This document shows positions 37,900 to 63,502 of a stretch of 64,000 bases of DNA, piece after piece. Origin of the DNA: Octopus bimaculoides (taxonomy: Eukaryota). The position numbers and the translations under genes are program-made. Under the pieces are notes generated by a model. It had not been told where the DNA came from. It saw only the letters and a list, made by a program, of their open reading frames with translations, and did no database searches. The stretch lies in assembly GCF_001194135.2 (NCBI RefSeq), contig NC_069006.1, forward strand, positions 22,964,976 to 23,028,975, in the 5' to 3' direction. Positions within the stretch are counted from its first letter, which is position 1; each line of letters opens with the position of its first letter.

Positions 37900-37957
<58 letters not shown>

Positions 37958-41175: not shown

Positions 41176-41283
41176 GGTGTAATGAGGGAGAGTTTACATG
41201 CAGAAATGGACAGTGCATTGCAGAATCTTATGCTTGCAATGGAAGACGTGACTGTTCTGATGGATCTGATGAATACAACTGCA
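41176..41283 (+). CDS. HSPG2: Exon: LDLa repeat 12 (recent duplicate, copy 2)
   Basis: cttccag|GG...TGCA|gtaagt; [35 protein letters not shown]; 108 nt. Confidence 0.9.
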
Positions 41284-42349
41284 GTAAGTTATCTCTATAT
41301 ATTATGGTTTTATTTCCTCTTGGCACTATGAGCAAATCATTTAGTTTCTTGAATGATTCTGCTCCACTTTTTATTCTGAAACACTCTGTTTGTTTTATTT
41401 CTTTCCACCCTAACATGAAAATTGATCACTGATATATGAATACATTTTCTTCTTTCTCTCTCTTGATTGGATATTATTGCTCTTATATCATTTTTGGTGA
41501 CATTTGGCATTTCTTCCCCATTCATGGGACTCCCATGCCGCCCATGAGGGAACCTCTACTTAGTTGTTTTTATGTAGCTGTTTTTACAAGGTCACCTCTC
41601 ATGCTAAAAATAGCAGTCAGATCTCATTCAAATTACACCCTATTGGCTTCAAAAAGGACATGCTGAATAAGCAACAATGATATGTAAAAATGGTTTAAAA
41701 TTACTGTTGTTGTTGCTTAGTAGCTCCTGCCCCAGCCAGCTCTGTTTGCATTTGACCAATGCTAGAACAGACATAACTGATAAACTTCAGCATTTAATTT
41801 AGTGTTTCTAACTGTGATATCCTGTCTTTCTTGTGGCTGGAGAGCATGGTATCCTTAGATATATGAAGTTGTATGAGTAATATTAATTTGATTTGATTTT
41901 GACTACTATGGCCAACAACTCTGGATAGATTTCAATATTGTTAGACCTGCTCAGCTTTCTTCATACTTGCCAAATTAGTGATAAAACAGAGTCACTAAAT
42001 GAGTAGATATAAGACAATATATCATTAAGGCTTATATAAGGTGGCAAGCTTACAGAATCATTACTGTGCCAAACAAAATGCTTGGTGGCATTTCTTGCAG
42101 TTCTTTATGTTCTGAGTTCAAATGTCACCAAGGTCAGTTTTGCCTTTCATCCTTTTTTGGGGTCTGCAAAATAAAGTACCTGTTGAGTGCTGGGGTCAAT
42201 GTAATGTTGATGTAATCAACTGATCCCCCCCTCCCTTCAAAATTGATGGCTTTGCACCAAAATTAGAAAGAAAGAATGTTTAAGGCTGAAACAATTACAC
42301 CAGAAACCTTACACTGCTTGTCATGATTATGTTTGCGCACATTTTTTTT

Positions 42350-42836
42350 ATCTTTCTTGATCACATTTCACGAGGCTCATTATTTAATTATATTTCACTG
42401 TTTTGTTACATAATTTCAATTCACAATGTTTTGTTATTTAGTTACACTTCTCAATGTTCTGTTACTTAATTACACCTCACAATGTTTCATTACTTAATTA
42501 CATCTCACATTGTTCTGTTTTTAATCACATTTCACAATGTTCTGTTATGTATTTACACCTCACAATATTCCATTACTTAATTACATCTCACAATGTTTCT
42601 GTTACTTAATTACACCTCACAATGTTTCATTACTTAATTACATCTCACAATGTTTCATTACTTAATTACATCTCACAATGTTTCCATTACTTAATTACAT
42701 CTCACAATGTTTCTGTTACTTAATTACACCTCACAATGTTTCTGTTACTTAATTACATCTCACAATGTTTCTGTTACTAATTAATGTTTCATCACAATGT
42801 CCTTGTACTTAATCACTTCTCGATATTTTCTGTTTC
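42350..42836 (+). repeat. Minisatellite, 28-29-bp unit, about 17 copies
   Basis: TTACTTAATTACA(C/T)CTCACAATGTTTC(A/TG); homogeneous at 42570-42780, decayed at both edges. Confidence 0.93.
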
Positions 42837-45059: not shown

Positions 45060-45195
45060 CATATGATGGGCTTCTGTACAATTTCTCTTCGCCAGTTTTC
45101 ACAGGCATTAGCCAACTTGAATCTATGGTAGATGACATTTGCCCAAGGTGTCACACTGTGCAGCAGATCCCAGAACCATATGTTAGCAAGCAAAA
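45060..45195 (-). mobile_element. Diverged antisense SINE fragment
   Basis: GACATTTGCCCAAGGTGTCACAC...CCCAGAACCATATG matches the reverse complement of the SINE head. Confidence 0.7.
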
Positions 45196-45976
45196 CTCCT
45201 GAATCCCTAAACCATACCTGCATCCACACTTGGAGTTGATACAACTGACAATGATATGTTGCCCAACACAAGATTAAATTTGCACCTATCTAAAGAGAAA
45301 TTGTAATTCTGTAGTAGAAGTGGTGCTAAAATTTAAACCAATTATTACTTTATATCTCATAGACAACAGATTACAAATTTGGATTTTTCTAAACTGTTTG
45401 TCTCGTGTATTGTGGTTTTTGTTTTTGTAACATGTTTTGAATGCAAGATCTTTTGTTGTCATTCTGAGAATAGAAAATTGACTAAAACAGACAAATACGT
45501 CTAATAGAATATTGCTGTTTCGATTTGTTTTCAAGTTTAAATTTAATCATGGTCTTTAGCAATAATCAATCAACTGCACTCCATCTCCTATATAGAGTGG
45601 TCATGGGTGAAGTCAAATGACAATTATTGCATGTACTATAAAAAGTTAGTAGTAGCAGTAGTTGCAGTAGCAGCACCAGCAGTGGTTGTAGTAGTAGCAG
45701 TAGTAACAACAGTAGTTGTTACTGTTGTAGTTTGTAAAAGATGAAAGCATTTAGATTGCTTAGATTGCTATTACCAACTTCAATGCCAGTTATGATATAT
45801 ATCAAAAGTGTCATTGTTTTTTTTTACTCTGCTTTTTCTAATTTTTAATGCAAAATCTTGAACTGATAAGATACTATCAAGTGAGTGTATGTGTGTGTGA
45901 GAGAGAAAGAAAGAATGTTATATGTGTGTATTTTTTTTAATGTTTGATAGTTTTTACTTATAAGTATACATCTGCA

Positions 45977-46019
<43 letters not shown>

Positions 46020-47567
46020 TCAGTATGTAAAAATATATTTGGTTTTTATGGCAAATTTTTATGCTTAAAATACTTCTAGTTTTGCTTAATAATAATAATA
46101 ATAATGATAATGATAAACAAATTAAAAATAATAAAGCCTTATAGTTAGTGCACTTTGCACAGGCTACGCATAAATGCAGTCAGTTGTGCAGTGAAGGCAC
46201 CATGGCCAAGTGTCTTCTGCCATAGCTTCACATATTAACCAAAGTTTTGTGAATGATATTTGGTCAACAGAATTTTTGTGGAAGTTCATCAGAGGGATCA
46301 TTCCTATTTTTGGTAGTAAGCTAATTCTCCTTCAGAGAGACTTAGAAATATTAATATTTATGTGTATATATATATATCAAAGAGCTAAACAATAAAACTG
46401 ATCAAAATGTTGTTTAGATGTAAATATTAACCCTTTAGCACTTAAATCGTCCACATCCAACTGAAATATTTCACTTGTTTTATGACTAAGCTGGCCAGAT
46501 CCAGCCTTTCACACCTATTCGGTAATATCATTTTAAAAAAGAACAACCACATTATTGAAATCTCAAAACCACTAGATAATGGATGATTTATTCAAAATGA
46601 TGTGGTTGGATAAGCATTATATTTGTCAGAGTAATCTGAATGCTGGAGGGTTGAAAAATATTTCAACTCCAAAGATAAGGTTAATTAGCAAAATTAAAAT
46701 TGTGTTAACAATAACTAATCTCAGATATTAAGTCCAAGAAAATTTGTTCTGAAATGTATATTTGAAACTGTTAGTGGCCTTATGCGTGCAATAGATTATG
46801 CATGGTTTTATGTTGCTGTCTTAGTTGACTTTGTCCTTAGTAATTCTGTATAAGGTCTTGTAGTTTGTTCTGTGAAATAATTGTGAGGTTAAAACCACTA
46901 AAGCAAATATATCAACCTGACAAGTGAAATGTCATGATTTGAACCTAATCGAGTCTTGTCAGCTTTATTGTACACAACATCGCATGTTCTCTTTGATCAA
47001 TTTGTATATAATCTATGAATATCATATTTTTATCAACTACTTTTATTGATTTCATGAAAAGAATGTGAGTATAAATATGCAATACTCTTTACAGTTGATG
47101 AGTTAATTTTGTACAAAATTATATATAGTGTTGGAATTTTCCATAGACCACATATTGTTGGCCAAAAAATTGGGAATTTTCCATAGACCCCGTATAAAAG
47201 TCAACCCTAGTATTTCCTGAACAACAAGACAACATTTGTGAGTCAAGGTACCATAAAATTTCGGCTGTTTTCATTATGCTAGTGCTTGCCATACGAGCAC
47301 CAACAATTTGACCTCTTTGATAGATCTGTCATTTTAATTACCTTTTTCTGATATCTGAAAAGAAACAGCAATTTTAGCAAAACATATTAAGCAACACTAA
47401 CGATAAATCAAAAACATAAAAATAAACAAGCTTTTGACAGTTTTATAGATATTTCAAAATTATGATGTTATGATGCTAGGTGTTTCCATTATTTTATCCA
47501 ACCCCTGTATATATATATATATATGTGTGTGTGAGAAAGTTGGTATGTGAAAGCACGTGGTTGGATG

Positions 47568-47864
47568 TATAAAAGATAATAAGAGTGAAAAAACTACAGA
47601 AGGCTTGTGTTACATGGTTAAAGTATATATTTAAATTATGTCAGAAAAATGTTATAAAAATGTTATAAAATCTTTTTGGTATATAAACATTGTATTTTGA
47701 GAAATAACCGGTTTCGTGTTGTCTTTTCAAATTTCTCTACTTCATTGTAACGTGAACGAACACGTTACAAGATTTTATAACATTTTTCTAACATTTTTCT
47801 GACATAATTTAAATATATACTTTAACCATGTAACACAAGCCTTCTGTAGTTTTTTCACTCTTAT

Positions 47865-47875
<11 letters not shown>
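47568..47875. mobile_element. MITE / foldback element with 107-bp terminal inverted repeats
   Basis: 47568-47674 and 47769-47875 are reverse complements with 1 mismatch; ends in TA next to (TA)n; internal 10-bp hairpin at 47745-47770. Confidence 0.88.
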
Positions 47876-47927
<52 letters not shown>

Positions 47928-48075
47928 TGTATGTATGTATACACACATATGTATATATTTGTGTAAGATATATTTATGTATTTGGTTCCATTGTTACAAA
48001 AATAATAAAACTTGGATTTTAAATATGATTTGTATGATAAGGTTCTTAATGTTTCTTTTTTTTTTTCCTTTGTAG

Positions 48076-48192
48076 AGTTTTCAACTTGTTCTCCTGATCA
48101 GTTCACCTGCTCTAATGGTGAGTGTATATCATTAGCTAGCCGATGCAACCGTCAATACGATTGCCGTGATGGAAGTGATGAACTCAACTGCA
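48076..48192 (+). CDS. HSPG2: Exon: LDLa repeat 13
   Basis: tttgtag|AG...TGCA|gtaagt; [38 protein letters not shown]; 117 nt. Confidence 0.93.
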
Positions 48193-48610
48193 GTAAGTGT
48201 AAACACTCTTACAACATATCTTTCTTGCCTTTCTCCCTCATCTCTCTCTCTCTCTCTCTCTGTTAGCCTTTCTCTCTGACTCTTTTATCACTGATATTTT
48301 ATTTATTTGCTTGTTATTGTTGTCATTGCCTTCATTATTCCTGTCATCATCATCATCATTGAAAAAAATCTCAGGTCCAGTGCTATGGACACATAATCCT
48401 TGACTTGTCTAAGAAACAGTAGCACCAAATAAAAACTAACTTAGACCGTGGTGACTAACAGCTGATGATGGAAGTATGTTGGATTGTTGGTATAACTGTT
48501 TTTGTATATGTGGAATTGTGTTATAACACATCCTTTTGATAGATTGTGGTGATTTTTCCAATTCATGTCAGCATCAAAAAGCAAGTGTAAAATGATGATG
48601 GTGTTGGTGA

Positions 48611-48660
<50 letters not shown>

Positions 48661-48922
48661 TATAACCCCAAGTTTTGCAGTTTCCATTCACTACATTTCA
48701 TATTATAAGATATTGGTGTATTCTATGATGACATTCAAGGTAATCAATTTCATAAACATGTATTTCCAGAGCAAATCCCTCTACTATCCTCTACTATCAT
48801 ATTTTTGTGCTGCTAATTTTTTATGGGAAAACTCCTGAGTATTGCATTAAATTAGTTATGAATGTTTAGCTTTGCATTAAAATGAGATACCATTACTTAT
48901 TAAATTGATTCAAAATTTACAG

Positions 48923-49039
48923 CTACTACAAGGTGTTCATCAAACCAATTCCGTTGTCATGATGGGAGTTGTATTCCTGCTGAAAGACGCTGTGACCGAC
49001 GCTATGATTGCCGTGATCGAAGTGATGAAAGGGGCTGTG
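48923..49039 (+). CDS. HSPG2: Exon: LDLa repeat 14
   Basis: tttacag|CT...TGTG|gtttgt; [38 protein letters not shown]; 117 nt; weak donor. Confidence 0.9.
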
Positions 49040-50255
49040 GTTTGTATTCATTTTTTTTTATATTGTTTCTCTTTTCTTATTATACAGATCTGGATTGCAT
49101 AAGATAGTTCAGTATGTTGACATCTCTCAGTCACAATGTCTTCTTCATATTCCAACTGAAAACAAAGGCATAACATTTCTGTAGTTTTAATTTACAAGTC
49201 CTAACTGCAGCTGAGGAAAGTCTTGGAAGAAATTAAAAAATATGGATCTCTTTCATGGACAATTCTACAAAAGTATGATGTATGAAATTGACCCCACCAC
49301 CTGACAAGTACTTTGCTTTAATAGTGATTTCTTACATCGGCAGAAGGCCAGAAATTTGTATTAGGAGGGATTAGTCAGTTATATTGGTGCCGTTACATTT
49401 TTGGCTAGTACTTTATTTTATTGACCCTAAAACATTTGATTTTAGTTGGACTTGAACTTAGAACATAAAGAGCTAGAGCAAATACCACAAGACATTTTAT
49501 CCCCACACTGCCAGTTACTCTACCTAATAATAATAATAATAACAATAGGCCACAAATTTGAGACGACAGGCTAGTCAGTTGTACTGACCCTAGTACTTGG
49601 CATACTTAATTTTATTAACCCCAGCAGGAGGATTGGTAAAGTTGACCTCAGCAGGATTTGAGCATAAATAGGCAGAACAAATATTGCAAGACATTTTGTC
49701 TGACAGTGTAAGAGCTCTGCCAATAACAGAAACATATAAACTGTAGCAGGACTCATAGCATTGCACATGAGATGTGGGTTGGATCTGTCTGCTAGAAACA
49801 ATGCACATGCTATGCAAAACTCTTTCAGTTCAGTAACTCTACTCAAACTCACGACCCACAACACATACCTTTTATAATAACCATCCACTAAAATAACTCA
49901 ACACATACTCTACACAATCAAATACTTCCATATGACCAGTAGTAGGCAATATAACACCAACAACTCATACAACTTGTATTCTCCACAGCTGCAATCTGTT
50001 AATACTGCAGAAACCGCATCACATACTCTTCATAATCACCAACTGACACCAAAACCCTTGACATGAACCACACAGCACATATTCAACTCAAATAACACTT
50101 ATCGAAATCACTCGACTCATATTGCAAGTACTCTACATAATAATCAAAATATTAAAATATCAAGCTCAATTAAGAAATCAAACCTCATAACAAAGATGAA
50201 GTTGACACAGCATGCAAGCACAAGTTTACATCCTCAAAAAAAAGAAAAGACAATG

Positions 50256-50295
<40 letters not shown>

Positions 50296-50357
50296 GAACA
50301 TAGTTACCTTAGTACTGTAGTAAGAACTTGCATAAAACAGTTGCTGTTACTCATGAT

Positions 50358-50421
50358 GTAGTAGTAGTAGTAGTAGTAGTAGTAATAGTAGTAGTAGTAG
50401 TAGTAGTAGTTGTAGTAGTAG
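50358..50421. repeat. (TAG)n microsatellite
   Basis: Direct reading. Confidence 0.93.
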
Positions 50422-50605
50422 TTTAGACACATGACCAGCAATTTTGAAAGAAATGGAGTCTGTACTAGGCTGATATTTATTTAACAATCCTGGAAGGATG
50501 AAAGGCAAAGTTGACCTTGGCATGAGTTGAACTCTTTACACCTAAGTTCAAAATCCCATTGAGGTCAATTTTGGGGATCAATGAAGTGAAGTACCAGTCA
50601 AATAC

Positions 50606-50631
50606 TAGGGTTAGGGTTAGGGTTAGGGTTA
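50606..50631 (+). repeat. Interstitial telomeric repeat (TTAGGG), about 4 copies
   Basis: TAGGGTTAGGGTTAGGGTTAGGGTTA. Confidence 0.9.
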
Positions 50632-52228
50632 TGCATCTGTATTGAGACGTATATGAGTCTGTATGTAAAACTCACATGTCCACATGATGATGTGCTCTCC
50701 ATAATTTGTTCTTGTAATTTTGGTAAAAATCTCACCTGCCATATGGTTTCTGAAGCATTATGCACTATTTCTTTACTGCATATTAATTTCATGCACTTTT
50801 AACTACTTAATTTATATTGCAACTCTGATTATGTATTTTTGAATGTGCTTGCCTATTAAGCACTTTTTTTTTTTTAATTCAACAAAGATGTTGAAGATAA
50901 AAATAAACCATATTCTCAAAATATACTCGCAAAATTTTGATAAAATCTCACATGCAATTTGTTTGAAACACTATGCACCATTCTCATCATGTTAAGCAAT
51001 TTCATGCACCACTCACTCACTTAATGCACTCTCACCTCATTTAATGTTGCATCCCTGATGATTTAGCTTTAAGGGGTTAAAGACCAGACAAACTCCCCAC
51101 TGCATTCCATATTTAATTTGTCCTTTGTCCTTGCTATTTTACGGTGGGGAAGTTTGATTTGAAGGACATGTGGTTACTTTTTCCAGCAGGTCAAATAACT
51201 CTGTTGAAGATCCCTTCTTGATTCATTCAGAATCACTTGTTATATTGGAGAGATTTGTTTTTATATTGAATATTGAATATCCTCAGTCAGCTTTGTTTGT
51301 GTTAACCTATGGCATGCAAACAGCTGACAAAGTCCTGGCCAACACTTGATAAACTGATATAAACTGCATGACAAGTTGGTTCTATTTTGTATAATGGATT
51401 AGTCAGCGAAAGAAAAGCAGTACATGACACATTTAAGAGTCTTTTATGATTGGTGGAAGGAGTTTAATCCACTAAAGGCACCCAAAGGCTCGATGGTTGA
51501 AGAACTTTGTTACTTAACAAAAGTTGATATTCCTTTATTATCAGCAAAGTCTTTAAGTACCTTTGGACCAGTTTCTTCTAATGGACAAGTTGGTGCCAAC
51601 ATACTCAATGTAGTAAACCAAGAAATTTTAATTAATTAAGACTACTTCTGGTGGTCAGGAGAAAGAATTATTTACTTATTTACTTCTAATCAAGAAAGGC
51701 AAGGAGAACAACTGTGAAATGTTAATTAGTTAAAAATAGAATATTGTTAATGCAGTAGTTAGTGAGTTTGATCTTAGCATTACTGTGACACTCTGGATAT
51801 GTGTTGGTCTTGTTAAACCAAAGCATACCCAGATGTGTCACTGCACTGCTAAGAAAATGGTGATGTGGATGGCATATTGCACTGCTAGGCTTGGGAGTTT
51901 GGGTATGATATTAGTTGTTCAAAGCATTTCCGGATAGAACACTTTATTCTACATTAACTCATTTCATCAAATTATTGTGAATAGGCAGTAACTATCCTTG
52001 AGGAAAATTAACTGTTATGACCAAGAATCCTATTCACTGAGAGATTTGTGTCTTATTCACTTTAGACTAAAGAAATCAGAACAAAGTGCTGATCCTTGAT
52101 ACCATGAACATTTTCTATTTTAAAAAGAAAATAAGCTTTTTATTAATAGATTTGACCCTGAAGCCACTTTATAGCTGTTCTTTTGCTTTCTGCATAATAC
52201 AACAACTTTTGTTATGTTGTTCTTAAAG

Positions 52229-52336
52229 GATGCTCAGCTGGCCAATTCGAGTGCCAGAATGGATTATGTATCAACGAAAACAAAATCTGTGACTCCAATG
52301 ACGACTGTGGAGATCAGTCAGATGAAATAGACTGCA
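52229..52336 (+). CDS. HSPG2: Exon: LDLa repeat 15
   Basis: cttaaag|GA...TGCA|gtgagc; [35 protein letters not shown]; 108 nt; absent from the ORF track. Confidence 0.92.
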
Positions 52337-54175: not shown

Positions 54176-54300
54176 TATCAACAGTTACTGTCAGAATAAA
54201 CCCACCTAATATCAGGGTAAAAGCTGGACGTCAAGCAATATTTACCTGTGATGTTCTGGAAGCAGAAGCCTCAGAAATCAACTGGCTCAGGCAGTCTGGT
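54176..54300 (+). CDS. HSPG2: Exon: Ig1 (type A) N-half
   Basis: ttatcag|TA...GGT|gtaagt; STVTVRINPPNIRVKAGRQAIFTCDVLEAEASEINWLRQSG; 125 nt, phase 1 to 0. Confidence 0.92.
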
Positions 54301-54710
54301 GTAAGTTTTTGTTTTGCCCTCTCCATAATTCACACCATCACTAACGCCATTAAATATTAAATTCTACACTTATTTTTTTTTTTTGCAATAGCTTTAGTAG
54401 ATAGCAGGCTCATCTATAAGAAAACTAACGATTATTAGTGTCAACAAAAAATAATTTAAAGTTTCCCACAAATAGAGAAGAGAATTCTAACATTTCAGGT
54501 TGTGTCTTTTATTGGAGAAGAAATGAGAAGTGTATTGGAAAGCTGCAGTAGCTTTAAATAAGTTTGAAGACTGTTAGAAAGAACATTAGATAGATAACTA
54601 GAAGAGTTAAAGATTGAGTAAAAAACAGGTTACATGCATGTGCATGCTGTTCCACACATATACACACACACAACACGTTCATATCTTTCGTTTCTATCTA
54701 TCCTTTTCAG

Positions 54711-54858
54711 AGAGCAATTCCACCATTGAGAAGTCACATTGATGGCAACAGACTTATTATTTATGAAACTCAACCATCTGATGCTGATGATTATATCTGC
54801 AAAGCTATTATCCGAGGCCAGAAATTTGCCAAGACAGCAAACCTTATTGTAGAACTTG
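54711..54858 (+). CDS. HSPG2: Exon: Ig1 C-half
   Basis: ttttcag|AGA...CTTG|gtaagc; RAIPPLRSHIDGNRLIIYETQPSDADDYICKAIIRGQKFAKTANLIVEL; 148 nt, phase 0 to 1. Confidence 0.92.
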
Positions 54859-57204
54859 GTAAGCTGGAAATGCTTTTTGTATTATTTTCTCATTAGAAAT
54901 GCACATTTCATCATATACTAAAAAGGTTTGATAATATGTAATTGGTTTTTAAGAATTGACAGCACAAAGTTTCATGAACCAGCTCAAGGTACCTCTCCAA
55001 TGTGAAGAGCAGCTCTATGGCCACTTGACCTGCAAGTAATAGCAGTAAGCCAAGTCACCCACAGATCATGCCTAATGCTTTGAAAAACATATTTTAAAAC
55101 AAAAGGGAATGGCCTGTTGGTTAATGTAATACAATCCTAGATGGGATGGTCGTAACTAAAACACCTTTGATCATAAGTCTGCTTGCTTAGGACTGACCTG
55201 GAACTTAGTAGTAATAACAAAAGTTGAGTGAAAATCCAGCCAGGAAGGGAGCCTCTACATGGTTGTTTAGCTGCTAGAAATACTAGCCAAAATTCTATCA
55301 AATCATAGCTTAACTTTTGTAAATTAAGAAGACATTAACACGGTGTCGTTAATCCTTATTTACAAAAGAAGTAAAAAGGAGAAACCTGCCTTCATGAGGA
55401 ACGCTTCACACTCTGATAGTTCTTAAAATATTAAAAAAAAAAAGGCAAGGGAGACAACTTTGAAATTTTAGTTATCTACAATTAATTTTTGGAAATGGAA
55501 TGCAGTGGGACGTGAATCTGACCTCTGTAACATGATGACAACTCTAGATATGCAGTTTTAATAAACATCAACAGTGAAGCATGGTCTGTGATTGATCTTA
55601 GATGGACTAAAGAGATGTAGGTTATTCAGGAGTGAACATGAATGACAAAACTTAACAGACAGACAAGGATAAAATGCTCAGGGGCTCCTGATGCATGAAA
55701 ACTTAATAGTAAAGTGGGTGTTAGCATATTTGATATAGTTAGCCAAGAAATTTTAATTAGAATTGCAGCGTTAGTGATGAGAACAAATAATTATGTAAAT
55801 TACTAACTGTGGTCAAAGTTAACATCCACTGCTGCTGTTTCATTGTATACTTGGGTAGAAAATATATAATTTTGTGCACTTCATTTTATGGCCTTATTAT
55901 CTTTTCACTTCTTTAAACCATAGTCGTCACCTGCAGGCAAATATTACCTGAACCTAGTGGGTATGTTGCAAAATTTTTGTTGCAGATTTATGTTTATTTA
56001 ATCATATTCAAATATAATATCTTTGGCTAGTGGAATGAACTGACAATGTTCAGAGACATAAAGAAAAGCCTGTGGCAAGGAACAATATATAAATATGTTG
56101 AGTTAAAGGCAATTAAGTACACTTTGTAGTTGAATGTTTTGAAATATTGAAGTTGTACTTGTTTGGCAAGTCATTTGATGCGAGACTGCATGTTGAGCCT
56201 GACACAGTTTCATTGTGCAAGAGTCATATACTCACATACACAAAAAAATTAACTGTTACAATTATTTTTATATTTTCATATGGTCTGTATAAAGTTGTCA
56301 AAATGTTTTGAGACACACTTCTGTGACTTGGTCATTGACTTTGGTCTGGAGAAAGGTTTGGGCTATAGCCTTCTTGAAATAAAATAATTAGAAACTCCTT
56401 AAGCATTTCGCCCAGCGTGCTAACGTTTCTGCCAGCTCACCGCCTTATTGCATTCCTGAAGCTCTATGCCAGTCGTGTACTTACTCATATTTGTGGCAGC
56501 ATTCACTGTGGGTGAGTCAAGCTGGCTCCAAGTTTCTCACGTCCATCACGAATGCTGACCACATCTGATGGTCAACCACAGTTGAGGCTGTAATGGATAC
56601 TCACTCCTGGTTCCACTGCTGAAGACCATAGACACAGGGACCTGATTGTCCCAGTCACGTCTTCAGTTGTCTTCCAACACTTTTGCACCAGCCTGGGAAG
56701 GGAACTGAGTTGACAGCCTTGCGAATGAATTTCCTCTGTCAGCCTGTTCCAGTCATGGGCAACCTGTGGCCTGCAGCACTTTCTGAATGGCATGCCTTCA
56801 ACTTTCTTAATTGTCCAGCCCACCCGAGGATGAGCCATGTTTCATGCAGCCTGCTTTTCAGAAAAGGTTGCCTGTGCAGTTGAATTAGTAATGATAATAG
56901 CTTCAAAGCAAAATATTAACTATAGCTAACTAATGTTCTCTAATTTATTTAATTATTGGGGACCCCATTAAAGACTGTCATGATAAAGCAGTGCTTGGAA
57001 GGAAGATGTGTAGCGTGTGATCGTTGCATTGTCCATGACAGAAATTTATAAAATAAGTGTCAGCCTGAAAAACTTATTGAAGGCCATGCTGCAGCTTGAC
57101 GACAGTCCAATGACTAAAGCCAGTGAAAGAATGGAGGAACACATTTACATGTATGGATGGAATTTATAGAATTCTCATTGTACCATTTTCCATTTTCTTT
57201 TCAG

Positions 57205-57329
57205 ATGTTCCATTCATAGTAACCATCTCACCACGGTCACTTAATGTTCGAGTGGGAGAAACTGCTTCCTTTGTATGTAATTTTGGTAGTGGCCACTCTG
57301 GAAGCATACAGTGGAGCAGAAGTGACAGA
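57205..57329 (+). CDS. HSPG2: Exon: Ig2 (type B) N-half
   Basis: ttttcag|AT...AGA|gtaagt; VPFIVTISPRSLNVRVGETASFVCNFGSGHSGSIQWSRSDR; 125 nt. Confidence 0.93.
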
Positions 57330-57599
57330 GTAAGTGATCTTAAGCAATTCATTTTCTACCCATGCCCTTTTAGACTAATTACATCCTTTCTTTTATTTTA
57401 AACTACCTCCAAATTCTGATTATATTTGAAAATTACTGAAACACACTTGCTATCCACTCATTAGAAAAATAGTCACAAAAGAATTAAATGGCTTTCCAAT
57501 CATATATTTAATTAAACATAAATAAATGAAGAGTTGTTTCCCAAATGTGTGTGTATTTTTATGTATTTCCTCTAATCTAGACCACAACCTTCATTTCAG

Positions 57600-57747
57600 C
57601 AACGTTTGAGTCCACGAGCTGTTGTTCAAGGTGGTTATTTGACCATCAACTCCGTGACCCCTTCTGATGCTGGAATATATACTTGCATTGGCTATGACGA
57701 CAAAGGTGGCAGAGTATCTGAGACAGCTGAACTCATTATTAAGACTG
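57600..57747 (+). CDS. HSPG2: Exon: Ig2 C-half
   Basis: atttcag|CAA...ACTG|gtaagt; QRLSPRAVVQGGYLTINSVTPSDAGIYTCIGYDDKGGRVSETAELIIKT; 148 nt. Confidence 0.92.
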
Positions 57748-57839
57748 GTAAGTTGTTTTCTTTTAATTATTTATTTATATGTTCCTTAATAACCGCTTTT
57801 ATTTTTACCTATTTTAACAAGATAGTAAATTGGCAGAGT

Positions 57840-58450
57840 CATTAGAGCTTGGAATAAAACAAAATCCCTTGTGTACTTCTTACAGCTTTCTGAGCTGAGT
57901 TCAAACTCTACAGAGGTCAACTTTGATTTTAATGCTTACCGGGTTGATAACATAAAATTTTAGCAGTGCTTGACTGGTACTTCTTTTGTTGGCCAGTAAT
58001 AATAATAATTATCCTTTCTTATTTTGACATGAGACCAGCAAACTTGAGGGATGGGGAAGCTGATTACATCTATCCCAATGCTCAACTGTTACTTAATTTA
58101 TCAATTCTGTAAAGATGAAAGGCAGAATAGGTCTCAACGGAATTTGAATTCAGATTGTAAAGCCAGAAGAAGTGCTGCTACGCATTTTGTCTGTCACAGT
58201 AACAATTCTGTCGGCTTTCTGCCTTAATGGTAATAATTAGCTTCAAATTTTGGCACAAGGCCAGCAATTTTGGGGAGGGGGTAAGTTGATAACTTTGACC
58301 CCAGTATTCAACTAGTGCTTATTTTATTGACCCTGAAAGGATGAAAGGCAAAGTTGGCCTCCACAGAATTTGAACTCAGAACACAAAGTTAGAATAAATG
58401 CCACAAAGTATTTTGTCTGGTGCAGTTACAATTCTACCAGCTTGCCACCT
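57840..58450. mobile_element. Cluster of a second short dispersed repeat family, both orientations
   Basis: Core GATGAAAGGCAAAGTTGACC...GAATTTGAACTCAG in + at about 58339-58381 and in - at about 57888-57930; other copies near 9748, 42100(-), 49630, 50486, 59860, 61680(-). Confidence 0.75.
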
Positions 58451-58482
58451 TGGTAAAAACAAGAATAAATTTCTTATTCCAG

Positions 58483-58607
58483 AAACTACCGTTAAAGTTC
58501 AGATCACACCACCCTCCATCAAAGTAGTTGCAGGATCCCGTGCAATATTCACCTGTGGTGTACCAGGAACTCGTCCTTCAAGTATAGAATGGAGAAGAAA
58601 ATCTGGA
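58483..58607 (+). CDS. HSPG2: Exon: Ig3 (type A) N-half
   Basis: attccag|AA...GGA|gtgagt; TTVKVQITPPSIKVVAGSRAIFTCGVPGTRPSSIEWRRKSG; 125 nt. Confidence 0.92.
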
Positions 58608-58701
58608 GTGAGTAAATGTTTTTGTAATTTTAATTTTTTAAATTTCTTTTTTTATAACGAGGTACAAATGACTCAGTGTAATGACCACCTTTCAATTTCA
58701 G

Positions 58702-58849
58702 AGTCCAATTCCTTCAGGAAGAACCTCAGTTGATGACAGCCGTCTTGTCATCTATGATACTGAAATGACCGACACTGATGACTATATCTGTGAAGCAACC
58801 ATTCGAGGTCAAAAGTTCACTGGTTCAGCCAGCCTAATTATTGAATTTG
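58702..58849 (+). CDS. HSPG2: Exon: Ig3 C-half
   Basis: atttcag|AGT...TTTG|gtaagt; SPIPSGRTSVDDSRLVIYDTEMTDTDDYICEATIRGQKFTGSASLIIEF; 148 nt. Confidence 0.93.
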
Positions 58850-59551
58850 GTAAGTGTTGTAAATATTTGTTATACTAGCTTAAATATTGGGTGAATGGGG
58901 TTGAAAGGCCTAATTGAATAATAATTGTAATATTGTTTTTGACTGGAAGCCAGTTCCTTGTTCCTATTCCAGTCAAAGGCAAACGTGGAATATAGCCATA
59001 GAGCCATATCATGTCCAACTGTGGCTATGTGGTTAAGAAGTTTTCTTTTTGACTATGTTGTTATTTGTTCATTTGTACTGTGTGTTAGAATGTCATCAAG
59101 CTGTAGAAACCATGCCAAAGCAGACAACAGTGTTTGGTATGGTCTTCTGACTTGCCAGCTCCTGTCAAACCATCCAACCCATGCCAGCATGAAAATGGAT
59201 GTTAAATAATGGTGATGTATCATTTACCATAACCTTGGTTTGACTAAAGCTTTGAGAAGGAAACCTTCACAGCTGTGAGGAGAGCCATCAGATTGAGGAA
59301 ACATTGTTGCGTTAGGATAGAAGAATTAATCTGAATTAGTTCAGCATCACCTACTAGACCATTGGGTACCTTTAGCAGAGTCCACACTCTGTTGTTGCTG
59401 GTCTAGCAATAACTTCCCCACCTCCTCTCACCAATCATGAAGGCTATGAAAATGGCTGTGTGGTGACTGCCATATTCCTTCCATAAAAAAACAACTACAG
59501 TAACAATATCAATAATAACATTGTTCTGTACTGGATTATCTTTATTTTCAG

Positions 59552-59676
59552 TTGTACCATTCCTTGTGACTGTCAATCCACGATCTTTGAATATTAGACA
59601 AGGAGAAACTGCCAAATTTATGTGTCAGATAGGAGCAGGTTATACTGGATCCATGGTGTGGAGTAGAAGACCAGCT
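59552..59676 (+). CDS. HSPG2: Exon: Ig4 (type B) N-half
   Basis: ttttcag|TT...GCT|gtaagt; VPFLVTVNPRSLNIRQGETAKFMCQIGAGYTGSMVWSRRPA; 125 nt. Confidence 0.93.
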
Positions 59677-59933
59677 GTAAGTTCAGCTCTTTATAGAATT
59701 TTGTTTTGTTCTTTTTATGTTATATTGGCTTTTTAATTATGTATTGTTTGTCATCGAAAGAATTTCTAACATAGGCACAAGGCCTCACATTTCATAGTTG
59801 GATACAGTGAGTTGAATCAACCCTAGTACTTTTGGTACTTATATTTTATCAAATAAGAATAAAAGGTGAAGTTGGCATTAGTGAGATTTGAACTCAGAAT
59901 GCTCACTGGAAATATCAATATTTCTTTACACAG

Positions 59934-60081
59934 CAGCCTCTCAGCTCTCGTACTACACAATCAGAAGGTGTTTTGATGATTAACTCAGCAACAGCCGATG
60001 ACAGTGGTGAATATATTTGTACAGGACATGGACCAGAAGGTCGAACAACAACGTCATCAGTCCAGTTGGTCGTTGAACGAA
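59934..60081 (+). CDS. HSPG2: Exon: Ig4 C-half
   Basis: tacacag|CAG...CGAA|gtaagt (NAGNAG acceptor); QPLSSRTTQSEGVLMINSATADDSGEYICTGHGPEGRTTTSSVQLVVER; 148 nt; absent from the ORF track. Confidence 0.92.
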
Positions 60082-60378
60082 GTAAGTCGTGTTTTATTAA
60101 TTTTCAAAATTAATTTAAACAAATTTTAGCAAAAACAATGTAACAGAAGCACTAACAGTTAAATTTGGTAGATAGAAAAAGTGCAAAAACCAGTTGGATA
60201 TATGTATGCATGCTTGTGTGTGTGTATGTGTGTGTGTTGCATGTGGCAGAATTGGTAGATCTTTGAACAAACATACCTTGTGGTGTTTGATTACTGCTTT
60301 CTCCCTCTAATTTCAAGTCCCACTTATTTTATTTTTTTGAAACTAAATGCTTTACTTTATTATATTTTATTGTAACAG

Positions 60379-60503
60379 GCTCATCATATACAATCAACAT
60401 CAACCCACCAAGTATCAATGTGCGTGCAGGATCTCGAGCAATTTTCACCTGTGATGTTGTGGAAGCACGTCCCTCAGAAGTCATTTGGTCAAGAGAGACA
60501 GGA
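60379..60503 (+). CDS. HSPG2: Exon: Ig5 (type A) N-half
   Basis: gtaacag|GC...GGA|gttagt; SSYTININPPSINVRAGSRAIFTCDVVEARPSEVIWSRETG; 125 nt. Confidence 0.91.
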
Positions 60504-61005
60504 GTTAGTAAATTTACTGTTGTCTGGTTTTATTTTCATACACCACCACCACTACCACAATCTATGCCACAAACACTACAAATACTATCACAGCTACTAC
60601 CACCTGCCAACCCTTATTAACACCAAAACCACCACTACTGCCCATATAGACACCACTATTGCCACCATTACTATCACACCCTCCCATCACAACCACTAAC
60701 ATTATTACCCTGCTTAAGATCCTTGGATAACTTAGTAAATCTACTTTATTGCAAGCATTTGGACCAGGTCTTCAGTTTTAGCATTAATTTCAGTCTCTGG
60801 ATTCACTCCTTTATATATTTAATGCTTTGTGTTATAAATGGAGAATAATTCAGTATCACACTGGCCTTTACAAAATAAAAAATGTGAGTTACATCATTTA
60901 ACTCTACTGTTTGGGATTCATTTTTAGAAAGATATGCATGAAATAGTAAGAATAAATGAATTTTTTTATATCATATACATATATACGTTTATATATATAT
61001 GCGAT

Positions 61006-61160
61006 CTATGGCTGTGTGGTAAGAAGTTTGCTTCCCAAACACATGGTTCTGGACTTAGTCCCATTACCTGACACCTTTGGCAAGTGTCTTCTGTTATAGC
61101 CTCAGTTCAACCAAAGCCTTGTGAGTAGATTTGGTGGACATAAATTGAAAGAAGTCCATC
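61006..61160 (+). mobile_element. SINE head fragment
   Basis: TGGCTGTGTGGTAAGAAG...GGCAAGTGTCTTC...CAAAGCCTTGTGAG. Confidence 0.8.
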
Positions 61161-61422
61161 ATGCATACACACACATAAAATATATAGTAATCAAAATGAA
61201 CTGAATGGAGTCAAGCTAAATTATGTGTGTGTGCATGTGTAGAAATAATTTTATATGAGTTCTCCACATGCTTTCCCTAAACATCAAGGAGAAAATTGTA
61301 CAGTGTGATCAAAACACAATATAATGCGGGTAGGGGATAGAGTGTTGTTCTTCTTTTTTAAATTTCAAATTTCTACAAAGTGAAGCTTTTCATATAGTTC
61401 ATTACAATTATGTTTTTTGCAG

Positions 61423-61570
61423 TTGCCTATTGCTGGATCGAGGAGCTCTATAGAACGAAACCGTCTTGTTATTTTTGACACTGTACCAGAAGATTCAGAT
61501 AACTATATATGCACAGTCACAGTTCATGGCCAAAGGTTTACCAACAGTGCTAAATTAACTGTTGAATCCG
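61423..61570 (+). CDS. HSPG2: Exon: Ig5 C-half
   Basis: tttgcag|TTG...TCCG|gtaagt; LPIAGSRSSIERNRLVIFDTVPEDSDNYICTVTVHGQRFTNSAKLTVES; 148 nt; absent from the ORF track. Confidence 0.93.
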
Positions 61571-62117
61571 GTAAGTAATAAAGCGTTACTTTAAAGTTAT
61601 TTGTTTATATATATATATGGCAGAATTGTTAGAGTATCAGAAAAAATGCTTTGCTTTATTTGTTCCAACTCTTTTCGTGTTCTGAGTTCAAATCTCACCA
61701 CAGTCAGCTTTGCATTTCATCTCTTCAGGATCAATAAAATATTAGTCAAATTGACCATGTGCTAAAATTACTACTGCTGCTGTTGTTTTTGTTGTTGTTG
61801 TATACATTGGTAGGTCATTAAAATAATCATGCCAGATTGTTCATTTACAAAGTCAAGTTATGTGATAGAAAAAAATTTTAAAAAAGGAAAAATAAAACAA
61901 AAGAAAACAAAGAAAAAGGAAAGAAAATTCACAGGGACAACACTCTTTTCAATACATGTGACGTACCAGTTAAAACAATCTTTTGCAGTTCTTAGACACA
62001 CCAATACAAATATACTTTTGTATACACACTAGGTGTATCACTCCTTGGACTTACAACACAGGATTGTATACTATTTACAAATACATCATTGCAATTATGT
62101 AATTTTTCCTTTTTCAG

Positions 62118-62242
62118 CTGAACGTTTGTCTGTCTCTATCCAACCATATCAGTTGACTGTTGATGCTGGAGAAAACGCAAAGTTCATGTGTCAAATCGAA
62201 GGAGGACGCAGTGGAACTTTACAGTGGACAAGAAACAACAAT
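62118..62242 (+). CDS. HSPG2: Exon: Ig6 (type B) N-half
   Basis: ttttcag|CT...AAT|gtaagt; ERLSVSIQPYQLTVDAGENAKFMCQIEGGRSGTLQWTRNNN; 125 nt. Confidence 0.93.
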
Positions 62243-62429
62243 GTAAGTGATACTACAGTATTTCCTGTTTCTACTTTTAAAATATATTTACATGTTTTTA
62301 ATTGGCTCAGCATAGGTGTGTGGTTTGTAGCCTCAGGCTTGGTTCCTTGGGCAAGAGTCTTCTTTTACTATAGACTCAGAATTGACCAATTGTGAGTGAA
62401 ATTTGGCAGAAACTATGTGGAAACTTTCC

Positions 62430-62466
<37 letters not shown>

Positions 62467-62495
62467 TGAACACATGTATGTATGTTTTTACAAAG

Positions 62496-62565
62496 TATTG
62501 GTCAGCATGAGGTTATGGTAGAAGACAAATTATTGGTCAGCATGAGGTTATGGTAGAAGACAAAT
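62496..62565 (+). repeat. 35-bp perfect tandem duplication
   Basis: TATTGGTCAGCATGAGGTTATGGTAGAAGACAAAT x2. Confidence 0.92.
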
Positions 62566-62729
62566 GCTTATCTTAGCAGTAGAATCAAATCTTGAGCAAC
62601 ATGGTTGCAATGCAAAGTTCTAAAGATCACTGTTATTGTCTGCATTGATTATCTCTTGACAAAAACTTATTTCAGTTTTGTTGTTTTCTCTTTGTATGTT
62701 ACTAATTTACCAATTTCTAAATTTTACAG

Positions 62730-62874
62730 CGACCATTGAGTTCTCGAACCACATCTCAAGATGGTATTCTGATGATCAATTCAGTCACCATCGATGATGC
62801 TGGAGTATATGCTTGTACAGCATATGGTGATTCTGGAAGAGCTTCTAAAACTGTAGAATTGGTAGTTGTACCAG
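62730..62874 (+). CDS. HSPG2: Exon: Ig6 C-half
   Basis: tttacag|CGA...CCAG|gtttgt; RPLSSRTTSQDGILMINSVTIDDAGVYACTAYGDSGRASKTVELVVVP; 145 nt. Confidence 0.91.
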
Positions 62875-63377
62875 GTTTGTGAAGTTGTTTTTTCTCTGTC
62901 ATTAACAAAGTTTTAAAGTTTTAAATCATGGATTACTAACTATTTGAAAATAATATTAAAAAGTACAAACATATTAGAGTGCTTACCACTTGGTCAAGGA
63001 AGCAAGCTATACTACAACGATTGTTTTACACACTTGAACAAAGCATTTTAGTTTGATGGTTTCAAAAAAATATGATTAAATAGATAATGTTTCCATATGT
63101 TCATTGATGTTTATAAAGCTTAAGCCAAATTCAATGAAAATTAACTTTAAAGATGAAGTATTTAAAATTACTAATTAGGAAGGTTGTGGTAAGAAAAATA
63201 ATCGTCAATATTTCAATTGACTATTATTTCATTTAGTGGTTAGGTTTTTTTAAATTGCATGATTTACAAACTCTGTATATATCTCCAGGTTATGAAAATG
63301 ACTTTGTGTGCTGTTCAATGACGTGTTTATTCAATCGTTCCATTTGTATACACATTGATTTCTGATGTTTCTTGCAG

Positions 63378-63502
63378 GTCCGAGTATAATTGTTACAGTA
63401 GACCCTGAAACACTGACTGTCCGTGCTGGACAATCAGCCAAATTTGTGTGTGATGTCCAAGATGGCAGTGTTAACACCTTGCAGTGGACCAGAGGCGGAA
63501 GA
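63378..63502 (+). CDS. HSPG2: Exon: Ig7 (type B-like) N-half
   Basis: cttgcag|GT...AGA|gtaagc; PSIIVTVDPETLTVRAGQSAKFVCDVQDGSVNTLQWTRGGR; 125 nt; partner exon not in the window. Confidence 0.92.

What the first reader, a model, noticed from the sequence alone, without database searches (positions are those of the whole stretch)
54176..63502. At least seven Ig domains directly after the LDLa array, built from an alternating A/B cassette
Seen: each Ig is a 125-nt plus 148-nt exon pair (one 145) with a phase-0 internal intron and phase-1 flanks. Ig1/3/5 share AGxxAIFTC, RLxIxxT, DxD(D/N)YIC and GQ(K/R)F. Ig2/4/6 share GExAxFxC, (Q/R)xLSxR and DxGxYxC. Ig7 is B-like, giving A-B-A-B-A-B-B. Type A domains replace the canonical F-strand Gly of DxGxYxC with Asp in all three copies. 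Established: vertebrate perlecan has one Ig between the LDLa block and the laminin-type domain III. Inference: tandem amplification of a 4-exon unit created a new Ig arm, or this is a perlecan-derived protein lacking domain III.
Basis: partly seen in the sequence, partly recalled or inferred. Interest (0 to 1): 0.7.

Follow-up and report, generated by a model that had tools for sequence, protein, structure and literature searches.

The report
Expanded Ig arm in mollusc perlecan
The window holds the front half of a perlecan (basement-membrane proteoglycan) gene in which one immunoglobulin module found in related animals has grown into a string of at least seven, a real but unsurprising lineage-specific variant of a well-known modular protein.

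Summary
Thirteen exons on the + strand (54176-63502) encode six complete I-set Ig domains and the first half of a seventh. Each domain is a 125 + 148 nt pair (one 145), with a phase-0 internal intron, phase-1 flanks and AG/GT at every boundary. Types A (Ig1/3/5) and B (Ig2/4/6) form two clades (bootstrap 100%).

The gene is a lophotrochozoan perlecan orthologue. An acidic Ser-Gly exon, a SEA domain, an unnamed 169-aa beta-sandwich domain and 15 LDLa exons precede the Ig block, collinear with scallop, snail, clam and nemertean perlecans.

Those relatives, and nematode, bee and mite fragments, have one Ig in the arrangement LA-array - Ig - LA×3 - Ig - laminin domain III. Type A is the best match to that single Ig. 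The conserved LA×3-Ig core and domain III are not in the window and probably lie downstream. So the vertebrate "one Ig before domain III" is the wrong comparator, and "lacks domain III" is unsupported.

The copies are old (dS ≥ 1, introns unrelated) and under purifying selection. Amplification as a 4-exon unit is plausible but unresolved.

Verdict: a new variant of a known kind, of modest interest. I infer that the block is a rigid Ig spacer or binding arm.

The parts
4441..4566 (+). Acidic Ser-Gly exon (DVDGSGDEVSGDGSS). It is a candidate glycosaminoglycan-attachment region of perlecan domain I. The exon limits are approximate.
   Evidence: One search shows the ORF. In one search, tblastn aligns it with residues 32-77 of scallop perlecan P0011 and with the N-termini of snail and clam perlecans.
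5123..6544 (+). SEA domain split over two exons, inside ORFs 5123-5356 and 6290-6682. The exact splice sites were not determined.
   Evidence: Pfam SEA gives E=1.6e-4 and 22.2 bits, below the gathering score. The C-terminal half (6395-6544) aligns with the SEA C-termini of four lophotrochozoan perlecans.
14526..15032 (+). Single 507-nt phase 1-1 exon encoding an unnamed 169-aa beta-sandwich domain ('UNK') between SEA and the LDLa array.
   Evidence: One search shows the splice sites. Pfam finds nothing. The exhaustive search returns 163 homologues, including perlecans with the domain at the same position. The AF2 model has pLDDT 96, and no close PDB fold was found.
21683..52336 (+). Array of 15 LDL-receptor class A exons (108-132 nt each, all phase 1-1). 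Three assembly gaps in the window could hide further exons.
   Evidence: One search gives the exon table. Pfam Ldl_recept_a finds 15 stretches at E=5e-153.
54176..54300 (+). Ig1 (type A), first half-exon, 125 nt
54711..54858 (+). Ig1 (type A), second half-exon, 148 nt; carries DADDYIC and GQKF
57205..57329 (+). Ig2 (type B), first half-exon, 125 nt
57600..57747 (+). Ig2 (type B), second half-exon, 148 nt; carries DAGIYTC
58483..58607 (+). Ig3 (type A), first half-exon, 125 nt
58702..58849 (+). Ig3 (type A), second half-exon, 148 nt; carries DTDDYIC and GQKF
59552..59676 (+). Ig4 (type B), first half-exon, 125 nt
59934..60081 (+). Ig4 (type B), second half-exon, 148 nt. A tandem CAG|CAG acceptor would also allow a 145-nt form starting at 59937.
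60379..60503 (+). Ig5 (type A), first half-exon, 125 nt
61423..61570 (+). Ig5 (type A), second half-exon, 148 nt; carries DSDNYIC and GQRF
62118..62242 (+). Ig6 (type B), first half-exon, 125 nt
62730..62874 (+). Ig6 (type B), second half-exon, 145 nt; carries DAGVYAC
63378..63502 (+). Ig7 (nearer type B), first half-exon, 125 nt. Its second half lies beyond the window end.

Best explanation
I could not verify the species.

The module order is: acidic Ser-Gly exon, SEA, an unnamed beta-sandwich domain, 15 LDLa modules, then at least 7 I-set Ig domains.

In other protostome perlecans the long LDLa array is followed by one Ig, then a highly conserved LA×3-Ig core, then the laminin-like domain III. 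Here that one Ig has been expanded into an alternating A-B-A-B-A-B-(B-like) array.
- Type A is the descendant of the resident Ig.
- Type B is a second, generic I-set type of uncertain origin. It is either a much-diverged copy or a copy of a domain-IV-type Ig.

The expansion arose by old intragenic tandem duplication of two-exon, phase 1-1 Ig modules. All copies have been kept functional since.

Inferred function: the array is a stiff rod about 25-30 nm long (about 4 nm per Ig; the per-domain length is from general knowledge). It lengthens the N-terminal arm, moving the glycosaminoglycan-bearing end and the LDLa array further from the laminin-like core, and it offers extra protein-binding surface. 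Because every Ig pair is 273 nt with phase-1 flanks, any Ig can be skipped in frame, so the length could be tuned by splicing. The alternation keeps neighbouring domains below about 31% identity, which is known to disfavour misfolding between adjacent repeats (general knowledge, Wright et al. 2005).

Shown: the gene structure, the domain types, orthology of the N-terminal half, one Ig at the equivalent site in relatives, and the age and constraint of the copies. Inferred: what lies downstream, the mode of amplification and the function.
For: **Gene structure.** There are 29 phase-compatible exons giving a 1325-aa open frame. Pfam finds 15 LDLa stretches, and I-set at E=1e-74 with 6 stretches plus 7 Ig_3 stretches.

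**Orthology.** The 169-aa domain retrieves perlecans with the domain at the same place:
- XP_060073482.1, Ylistrum balloti (4494 aa): SEA, LDLa×18 in Pfam (19 in my local map), Laminin_B×3 and LamG×3.
- Bulinus truncatus, KAH9488651/2.
- Tubulanus polymorphus, XP_074655735.1.
- Mactra and Elysia.

The acidic Ser-Gly exon and the SEA half align collinearly with these N-termini.

**One Ig at the equivalent site.** This holds in scallop, snail and nemertean. It also holds in nematode, bee and mite fragments and in P0155.

**Type A is that Ig.**
- The A-profile scores 43, 49 and 38 bits on that Ig. It is the only Ig in each relative where A clearly beats B.
- The NJ tree places the A clade among those Igs.
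- The shared motifs LRINPEAQRVRAGNEAIFEC and YADDYIC point the same way.

**Core missing from the window.** The conserved LA×3-Ig core is not there. In scallop, Laminin_B starts about 95 aa after the core Ig.

**Old copies under constraint.**
- dS is 1.0-2.2 and dN/dS is 0.16-0.45 within each type.
- There is no intron similarity.
- Every complete domain keeps its Cys pair and Trp.

**Exon-level duplication is active in this gene.** LA11 and LA12 share 97-98% identical flanking intron.
Against: **Downstream is unseen.**
- The window ends inside Ig7, so the total Ig number, the downstream LA×3-Ig core and domains III-V were not observed. An attempt to extend the sequence failed.
- No cephalopod perlecan was available for comparison, so I cannot say at what taxonomic depth the expansion arose.

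**Homology support is weak in places.**
- Support for A nesting with the resident Ig is weak in the tree (about 22% bootstrap) and rests mainly on profile scores.
- LDLa modules could not be matched one-to-one between species, so positional homology rests on module order and counts.

**Comparator quality.**
- The relatives are computational gene models that could have missed Ig exons.
- Scallop and snail also have early Igs inside the LDLa array that are absent here or hidden in assembly gaps.

**Function and splicing.** Neither was tested.
Confidence: 0.62

Rival explanations
1. The gene is a perlecan paralogue or a truncated perlecan-derived protein (SEA-UNK-LDLa-Ig only). It would end in an Ig tail and lack the LA×3-Ig core and domains III-V.
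For: - No LA×3-Ig core or laminin exon is in the window.
- Relatives have extra gene models with UNK plus LDLa only, such as Bulinus KAH9488649 (669 aa) on the same contig as the perlecan models and Owenia partial proteins. UNK-LDLa paralogues or split models therefore exist.
Against: - The window simply stops in mid-domain, with no terminal exon, stop codon or 3' end visible.
- The N-terminal order (acidic SG, SEA, UNK, about 15 LDLa, A-like Ig) matches full-length perlecans module for module.
- The short relatives are marked partial or are probably fragmented models.
Confidence: 0.13
2. The Ig pairs are alternative exons, either mutually exclusive or freely skipped cassettes. Mature proteins would then carry only one or a few Igs at this site, as in other protostomes, and the array would be a splicing menu rather than a long arm.
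For: - All Ig pairs are the same length and phase (273 nt, phase 1-1), so any subset can be spliced in frame.
- Relatives have one Ig here.
- Alternative splicing of perlecan Ig exons is known in C. elegans unc-52. PMC6266596 lists its splicing regulators.
- A tandem CAG|CAG acceptor lies at Ig4.
Against: - Co-inclusion keeps the frame, so nothing enforces exclusivity.
- The shortest intron is 94 nt, so there is no steric block.
- Unlike Dscam-type arrays, the two half-exons alternate rather than forming runs of the same half.
- A and B differ by about 70-78%, which does not look like interchangeable variants.
- No transcript data were available.
Confidence: 0.15
3. The repeat is an artefact: duplicated haplotigs, assembly error or decaying pseudo-exons.
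For: The window has five N runs, and one very recent local duplication at 97-98% identity around LA11/LA12.
Against: - There are no N runs between 54 and 64 kb.
- The copies are only 54-64% identical in DNA and have unrelated introns. Assembly duplication would give near-identity.
- All 13 exons keep open frames, canonical splice sites and conserved structural residues, with dN/dS below 0.5.
Confidence: 0.02

Closest known systems
Lophotrochozoan perlecans: Ylistrum balloti XP_060073482.1, Bulinus truncatus KAH9488651/2, Tubulanus polymorphus XP_074655735.1
   Same: - The N-terminal order is the same: acidic Ser-Gly region, SEA, the unnamed beta-sandwich domain, then a long LDLa array (6-18 modules) followed by an A-like Ig.
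- The scallop Ig even shares the Gly-to-Asp change (YADDYIC).
   Different: - They have one Ig at this site, followed by LA×3-Ig and domain III. The window has at least seven Igs in two alternating types.
- Scallop and snail also have one or two early Igs inside the LDLa array, which are not seen here.
Vertebrate perlecan/HSPG2 domain II (four LDLa plus one Ig) and Trichoplax perl (three LDLa plus one Ig)
   Same: LDLa modules are followed by Ig upstream of laminin-like domain III, and domain I has SGD motifs and a SEA module (PMC6266596, PMC4398486).
   Different: - The vertebrate single Ig corresponds to the conserved core Ig, which is not in the window.
- Vertebrates lack the extra upstream Ig, the long LDLa array and the unnamed domain.
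Nematode UNC-52-type perlecan N-terminus (Ig-LA×3-Ig), e.g. Caenorhabditis tropicalis fragment P0160
   Same: It has an Ig upstream of the LA×3-Ig core. That Ig groups with type A and with the molluscan resident Ig in the tree.
   Different: That Ig is single, and the fragments recovered show no long LDLa array and no A/B alternation.
Perlecan domain IV Ig array (21 Ig in human, about 38-40 in Trichoplax)
   Same: - It is a tandem I-set array whose number varies between lineages through intragenic recombination (PMC4398486).
- The B-profile scores best on scallop domain IV Igs.
- A two-exon-per-Ig gene structure is reported for human HSPG2. That is from my memory of Cohen et al. 1993 and was not checked here.
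   Different: It lies after domain III, not inside domain II, and no regular two-type alternation has been described for it.
Drosophila Trol (perlecan)
   Same: It is said to have a greatly expanded domain II with many LDLa modules and interspersed Igs. This is from memory only; the papers read here do not give the architecture.

Membership tests
Perlecan (HSPG2/UNC-52/Trol) | Domain I: Ser-Gly(-Asp) glycosaminoglycan-attachment motifs followed by a SEA module | tested here: met
   - DVDGSGDEVSGDGSS lies at 4441-4566.
- Pfam SEA gives E=1.6e-4, which is below the gathering score.
- Both exons align collinearly with the N-termini of four lophotrochozoan perlecans.
- Actual glycosaminoglycan attachment cannot be tested here.
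Perlecan (HSPG2/UNC-52/Trol) | Domain II: LDL-receptor class A modules followed by Ig | tested here: met
   There are 15 Ldl_recept_a stretches, then I-set Ig domains in the same frame.
Perlecan (HSPG2/UNC-52/Trol) | Conserved LA×3-Ig core next to domain III (Ig with PTPLIVWRLNWGNIP...AYTCEA) | tested here: inconclusive
   No window LDLa or Ig matches it. The window ends inside Ig7, so the core may lie downstream.
Perlecan (HSPG2/UNC-52/Trol) | Domain III (Laminin B and laminin-EGF), domain IV (Ig array), domain V (LamG and EGF) | not testable with these tools
   These would lie outside the 64-kb window. The attempt to reach flanking sequence failed. All are present in the scallop orthologue.
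Perlecan (HSPG2/UNC-52/Trol) | Orthology marker: the lineage-restricted 169-aa domain between SEA and the first LDLa | tested here: met
   The exhaustive search puts this domain at the same position in scallop, snail, clam, sea-slug and nemertean perlecans, at 35-37% identity (28% for the clam).
I-set immunoglobulin domain | About 90 aa with the B- and F-strand Cys pair, the C-strand Trp and the DxGxYxC tyrosine-corner motif | tested here: met
   - Pfam I-set gives E=1.1e-74 with 6 stretches.
- Cys, Trp and Tyr are present in all six complete domains.
- Type A has Asp in place of Gly. Among 96 Ig domains of relatives this position is Gly in 89 and Asp in 2, both of them in scallop perlecan domain II.
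Mutually exclusive exon arrays (Dscam type) | Runs of same-type alternative exons, with a mechanism that forbids co-inclusion (frame break, steric limit or competing RNA pairing) | tested here: not met
   The half-exons alternate a, b, a, b. Co-inclusion keeps the frame, and the shortest intron is 94 nt. RNA pairing and transcripts were not examined.

The most novel reading that the evidence does not exclude
The A/B Ig arm is a cephalopod-specific (or coleoid-specific) innovation of perlecan domain II. It would have been built by recruiting a domain-IV-type Ig (type B) next to the resident Ig (type A) and amplifying the pair. It would be used, perhaps with regulated exon skipping, to change the reach or ligand repertoire of the N-terminal arm in the basement membranes of the cephalopod closed vasculature and large nervous system.
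Probability: 0.12. Interest if true: 0.5.

Novelty: new variant of a known kind. Interest (0 to 1): 0.3.

Why it matters
Perlecan is a core basement-membrane component in all bilaterians. Its modules differ in number between lineages, but the variation described so far concerns domain IV Igs and LDLa counts. An expansion from one to at least seven Igs inside domain II, in two alternating types, adds a third variable region. It also gives a clean natural example of how phase 1-1 two-exon Ig modules multiply while neighbouring domains stay dissimilar.

If the expansion is specific to cephalopods, it would be a candidate matrix adaptation worth testing. If not, it is simply part of the known plasticity of this protein.

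The side finding may be of equal value for annotating invertebrate matrisomes. It is a confidently folded domain, unnamed in Pfam, that is conserved at the N-terminus of lophotrochozoan perlecans and has bacterial relatives.

Tried and rejected
- **Word-indexed protein search with the spliced 586-aa Ig protein.** It returned only three distant hits (Robo-like), so no cephalopod orthologue is in that collection.
- **PDB sequence search with Ig1-Ig2.** The hits were generic I-set proteins (Robo, sidekick, NCAM, perlecan 1gl4 at E=2e-9), which did not discriminate.
- **Exhaustive search with the spliced sequence.** I used the single-exon 169-aa domain as an orthologue anchor instead, and that worked.
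- **Third word-indexed search, with an Ig-LA×3-Ig profile.** The 120 best hits listed were all fragments under 650 aa. They were useful for the Ig-LA×3-Ig pattern but included no cephalopod and no full-length protein.
- **One-to-one matching of LDLa modules between species.** It was unresolved because the modules are too short and too alike.
- **Testing the 4-exon-unit model by congruence of the A and B sub-trees.** It was unresolved.
- **Extending past the window end by exact look-up of the ORF spanning 63365-63682.** The ORF is not on record.
- **Literature on cephalopod or mollusc perlecan architecture, and on the SRA run of the related contig.** I found nothing relevant.
- **Trol architecture.** The papers available do not state it.
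- **tRNA scan.** It found none.
- **Assembly-artefact and pseudo-exon readings.** I rejected both.

Full report
**1. The observation**

The region 54176-63502 on the + strand holds 13 exons. Each has an open frame, an AG acceptor with a polypyrimidine tract, and a GT donor (10 of the 13 read GTAAG). They pair as 125 + 148 nt, with one second exon of 145 nt, so each Ig is 273 nt with a phase-0 internal intron and phase-1 flanks. The last exon (63378-63502) is the first half of a seventh domain. Its partner is not in the remaining 498 nt of the window.

The spliced 586-aa product scores E=1.1e-74 on Pfam I-set (6 stretches) and gives 7 Ig_3 stretches. A local profile finds exactly these 13 half-exons, at E 1e-15 to 1e-19, and nothing else Ig-like on either strand of the 64 kb.

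The two types are well separated:
- A-A identity is 51-53%, B-B is 45-47% and A-B is 22-31%.
- The A|B split has 100% bootstrap support. In a larger tree with 33 other perlecan Igs, the A clade has 99.7% and the B clade 89%.
- The Ig7 half-domain is closer to B (34-44%) than to A (27-32%), and the A clade excludes it. It does carry some A-like residues (RAGQSA, CDV).

**2. What the gene is**

Fifteen LDLa exons lie upstream of the Igs (21683-52336). Each is 108-132 nt and phase 1-1, and Pfam finds 15 Ldl_recept_a stretches.

Further upstream lie three more parts:
- an acidic exon with DVDGSGDEVSGDGSS (4441-4566);
- two exons of a SEA module (Pfam E=1.6e-4, below the gathering score);
- a 507-nt phase 1-1 exon (14526-15032) encoding a 169-aa domain with no Pfam match.

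The frame stays open across all 29 exons from 14526 to 63502, giving 1325 aa.

It returned 163 homologues. The long ones are annotated perlecans:

| Species | Accession | Notes |
|---|---|---|
| Ylistrum balloti (scallop) | XP_060073482.1 | 4494 aa; Pfam finds SEA, 18 LDLa (19 in my local map), 3 Laminin_B, laminin EGF, many Ig, 3 LamG |
| Bulinus truncatus (snail) | KAH9488651/2 | perlecan models |
| Tubulanus polymorphus (nemertean) | XP_074655735.1 | 1751 aa |
| Mactra antiquata, Elysia marginata | - | partial |

In each, the domain sits between SEA and the first LDLa. tblastn of their N-termini against the window aligns the acidic Ser-Gly exon, the SEA C-terminal half and the 169-aa domain in the same order. 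The window therefore holds the 5' half of the perlecan orthologue of a lophotrochozoan.

A genomic contig from a public sequencing run (SRR11869384) is 89% identical over 991 nt, introns included. A close relative has therefore been sequenced, but I could not name the species. It is consistent with 33% G+C and abundant (CA)n repeats, but it is unverified.

**3. How the Ig block compares with relatives**

Local profile maps give these architectures:

| Species | Architecture |
|---|---|
| Scallop | SEA-UNK-LA5-Ig2-LA11-Ig-LA3-Ig-[domain III]-Ig×12+-LamG3 |
| Snail | UNK-LA4-Ig-LA14-Ig-LA3-Ig-[domain III] |
| Nemertean | UNK-LA6-Ig-LA3-Ig-[domain III] |
| Clam (partial) | UNK-LA2...LA13-Ig |

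Fragments from nematodes, a bee, a mite and an unnamed metagenomic protein all show Ig-LA3-Ig.

Protostome perlecans thus share a core of three conserved LDLa modules plus a very conserved Ig (PTPLIVWRLNWGNIP...AYTCEA). Domain III follows this core directly; in scallop, Laminin_B starts about 95 aa after it. One further Ig lies upstream of the core.

None of the window's LDLa or Ig modules corresponds to the core:
- Ig identity to the core Ig is 16-28%.
- No LDLa module has its best match there.

Type A is the best match to the single upstream Ig:
- The A-profile scores 43, 49 and 38 bits on it in scallop, snail and nemertean. It is the only Ig in each protein where A clearly beats B.
- The nemertean Ig begins LRINPEAQRVRAGNEAIFEC, against VRINPPNIRVKAGRQAIFTC in Ig1.
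- The scallop Ig has YADDYIC.
- The NJ tree nests the A clade among these Igs, though with weak support of about 22%.
- The number of LDLa modules before that Ig is 16 in scallop, 18 in snail and 15 in clam, similar to the 15 here.

Type B is different:
- Its profile scores best on domain IV Igs of scallop (up to 47 bits).
- It sits next to the second domain IV Ig in the tree, again weakly.
- A+B monophyly has 3% support.

B is therefore either a strongly diverged copy of A or a domain-IV-type Ig brought in by intragenic recombination.

**4. Age and mode of the expansion**

- Within each type dS is 1.0-2.2, which is near saturation.
- dN/dS is 0.16-0.45, and third-position identity is 41-51%.
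- The introns share no similarity.

The duplications are therefore old, and the copies are under purifying selection. They are not assembly duplicates or decaying pseudo-exons.

The alternation suggests amplification of an A+B, four-exon unit, but the evidence does not settle this. Branching within A and within B is unresolved, and the closest pairs (Ig1/Ig5 and Ig4/Ig6) do not mirror each other.

Exon-level duplication is demonstrably active in this gene. A segment of about 480 bp that includes the LA11/LA12 exons is duplicated. The flanking intron is 97-98% identical and the exon 92%.

**5. The Gly-to-Asp change**

Among 96 Ig domains of the collected relatives, the position is Gly in 89 and Asp in only 2. 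Both Asp cases are in scallop perlecan domain II, and one is the orthologue of type A. The substitution is therefore unusual for I-set domains in general. It is a feature of this particular perlecan Ig in at least bivalves and this genome, not an innovation of the amplified block. Snail and nemertean keep Gly.

**6. Likely function (inferred)**

A run of seven or more I-set domains without linkers should form a rod about 25-30 nm long, taking about 4 nm per Ig from general knowledge. It would lengthen the N-terminal arm between the glycosaminoglycan/SEA/beta-sandwich/LDLa part and the laminin-like core, and it would add binding surface.

Three structural points bear on this:
- Adjacent domains are at most 31% identical (about 44% for the Ig6 and Ig7 first halves), whereas same-type domains are 45-53% identical. 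This fits the known tendency of tandem-repeat proteins to keep neighbours dissimilar to avoid inter-domain misfolding (general knowledge).
- Every pair is in-frame and symmetric, so regulated skipping is possible. This is the basis of the splicing-menu rival, which only transcript data can settle.
- Nothing in the structure enforces mutual exclusion. The frame is kept on co-inclusion, and the shortest intron is 94 nt.

**7. Comparison with the known, and novelty**

Variation in perlecan module number is well documented for domain IV, with 21 Igs in human and about 38-40 in Trichoplax, attributed to intronic recombination (PMC4398486). The vertebrate domain II has four LDLa and one Ig (PMC6266596).

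The new element here is an expansion inside domain II, at the site of the extra protostome Ig, in two alternating types. The papers I searched do not describe this. It is absent from the four lophotrochozoan proteins and from the ecdysozoan fragments I recovered.

Three limits apply:
- Genome annotations of cephalopods very probably already contain this gene model, which I could not check.
- The relatives are computational models.
- The downstream half of the gene is unseen.

I rate it a new variant of a known kind, with interest 0.3. It is a sound, modest piece of matrix-protein evolution rather than a surprise.

**8.

The new Ig arm relative to other lophotrochozoans stands. The vertebrate comparator is the wrong homologue, "lacking domain III" is unsupported, and the four-exon-unit mechanism remains plausible but untested.

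Noticed in passing
window 14526-15032 (+): A single phase 1-1 exon encodes a 169-aa domain with no Pfam match. It is conserved at 35-37% identity (28% in the clam) between SEA and the first LDLa in scallop, snail, clam, sea-slug and nemertean perlecans. It also occurs in multi-copy proteins of annelids and nemerteans and in Candidatus Entotheonella 'LamG-like jellyroll' proteins. AF2 gives an all-beta sandwich (pLDDT 96, pTM 0.91). Foldseek finds no PDB match with E below 1e-3; the best TM-scores are about 0.5, to a phage fibre and the Cwp84 lectin-like domain. It looks like an uncharacterised lectin-like module.
   Followed up: partly
window 4441-4566 and 5123-6544 (+): A perlecan domain I equivalent: an acidic exon with two Ser-Gly-Asp-type motifs (DGSGDEVSGDG) followed by a two-exon SEA module. 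This is notable because the review read here (PMC6266596) says Drosophila and C. elegans perlecans lack domain I. The scallop orthologue also has a SEA module (Pfam E=3e-9).
   Followed up: partly
window 39775-40255 and 40842-41322 (+): A very recent local duplication carries the LA11 and LA12 exons. The flanking intron is 97-98% identical, but the exons are only 92% identical (9 differences in 108 nt, changing 6 of 35 residues). Either the exon diversified faster than its intron after duplication, or the intron has been gene-converted. Assembly error is not excluded.
   Followed up: partly
window 59931-59936 (+): A tandem CAG|CAG (NAGNAG) acceptor lies in front of the second exon of Ig4. It could add or drop one Gln, giving a 148-nt or 145-nt exon.
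   Followed up: no
window 58016-58451 (+): Two tandem copies of a 210-nt unit (70% identity) lie in the intron between Ig2 and Ig3. A 35-nt ×2.2 repeat lies at 62490-62565 in the Ig6 internal intron.
   Followed up: no
window 56572-56838 (-): An 88-aa ORF with an unusually high G+C content lies inside the 2.3-kb Ig1-Ig2 intron. It may be a fragment of a mobile element. It was not identified.
   Followed up: no
window 6942-6951, 12655-12973, 21294-21303, 26255-26656, 43938-44395: Five N runs (assembly gaps). Two of them (about 400-460 nt) fall inside the LDLa array, so one or two LDLa exons, or an early Ig half-exon, could be missing from the count of 15.
   Followed up: no
L001 1-1010 (Logan SRR11869384) vs window 14229-15214: A genomic contig from a public run is 89% identical across exon and introns. 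The encoded domain is 92% identical. A closely related species has therefore been shotgun-sequenced and could be used for comparative annotation.
   Followed up: partly
P0013, P0017, P0154 (Bulinus truncatus, one 503-kb contig): Three neighbouring gene models (KAH9488649, KAH9488651, KAH9488652) each start with the 169-aa domain plus LDLa modules. They are either tandem perlecan paralogues or split or duplicated models in that assembly.
   Followed up: no
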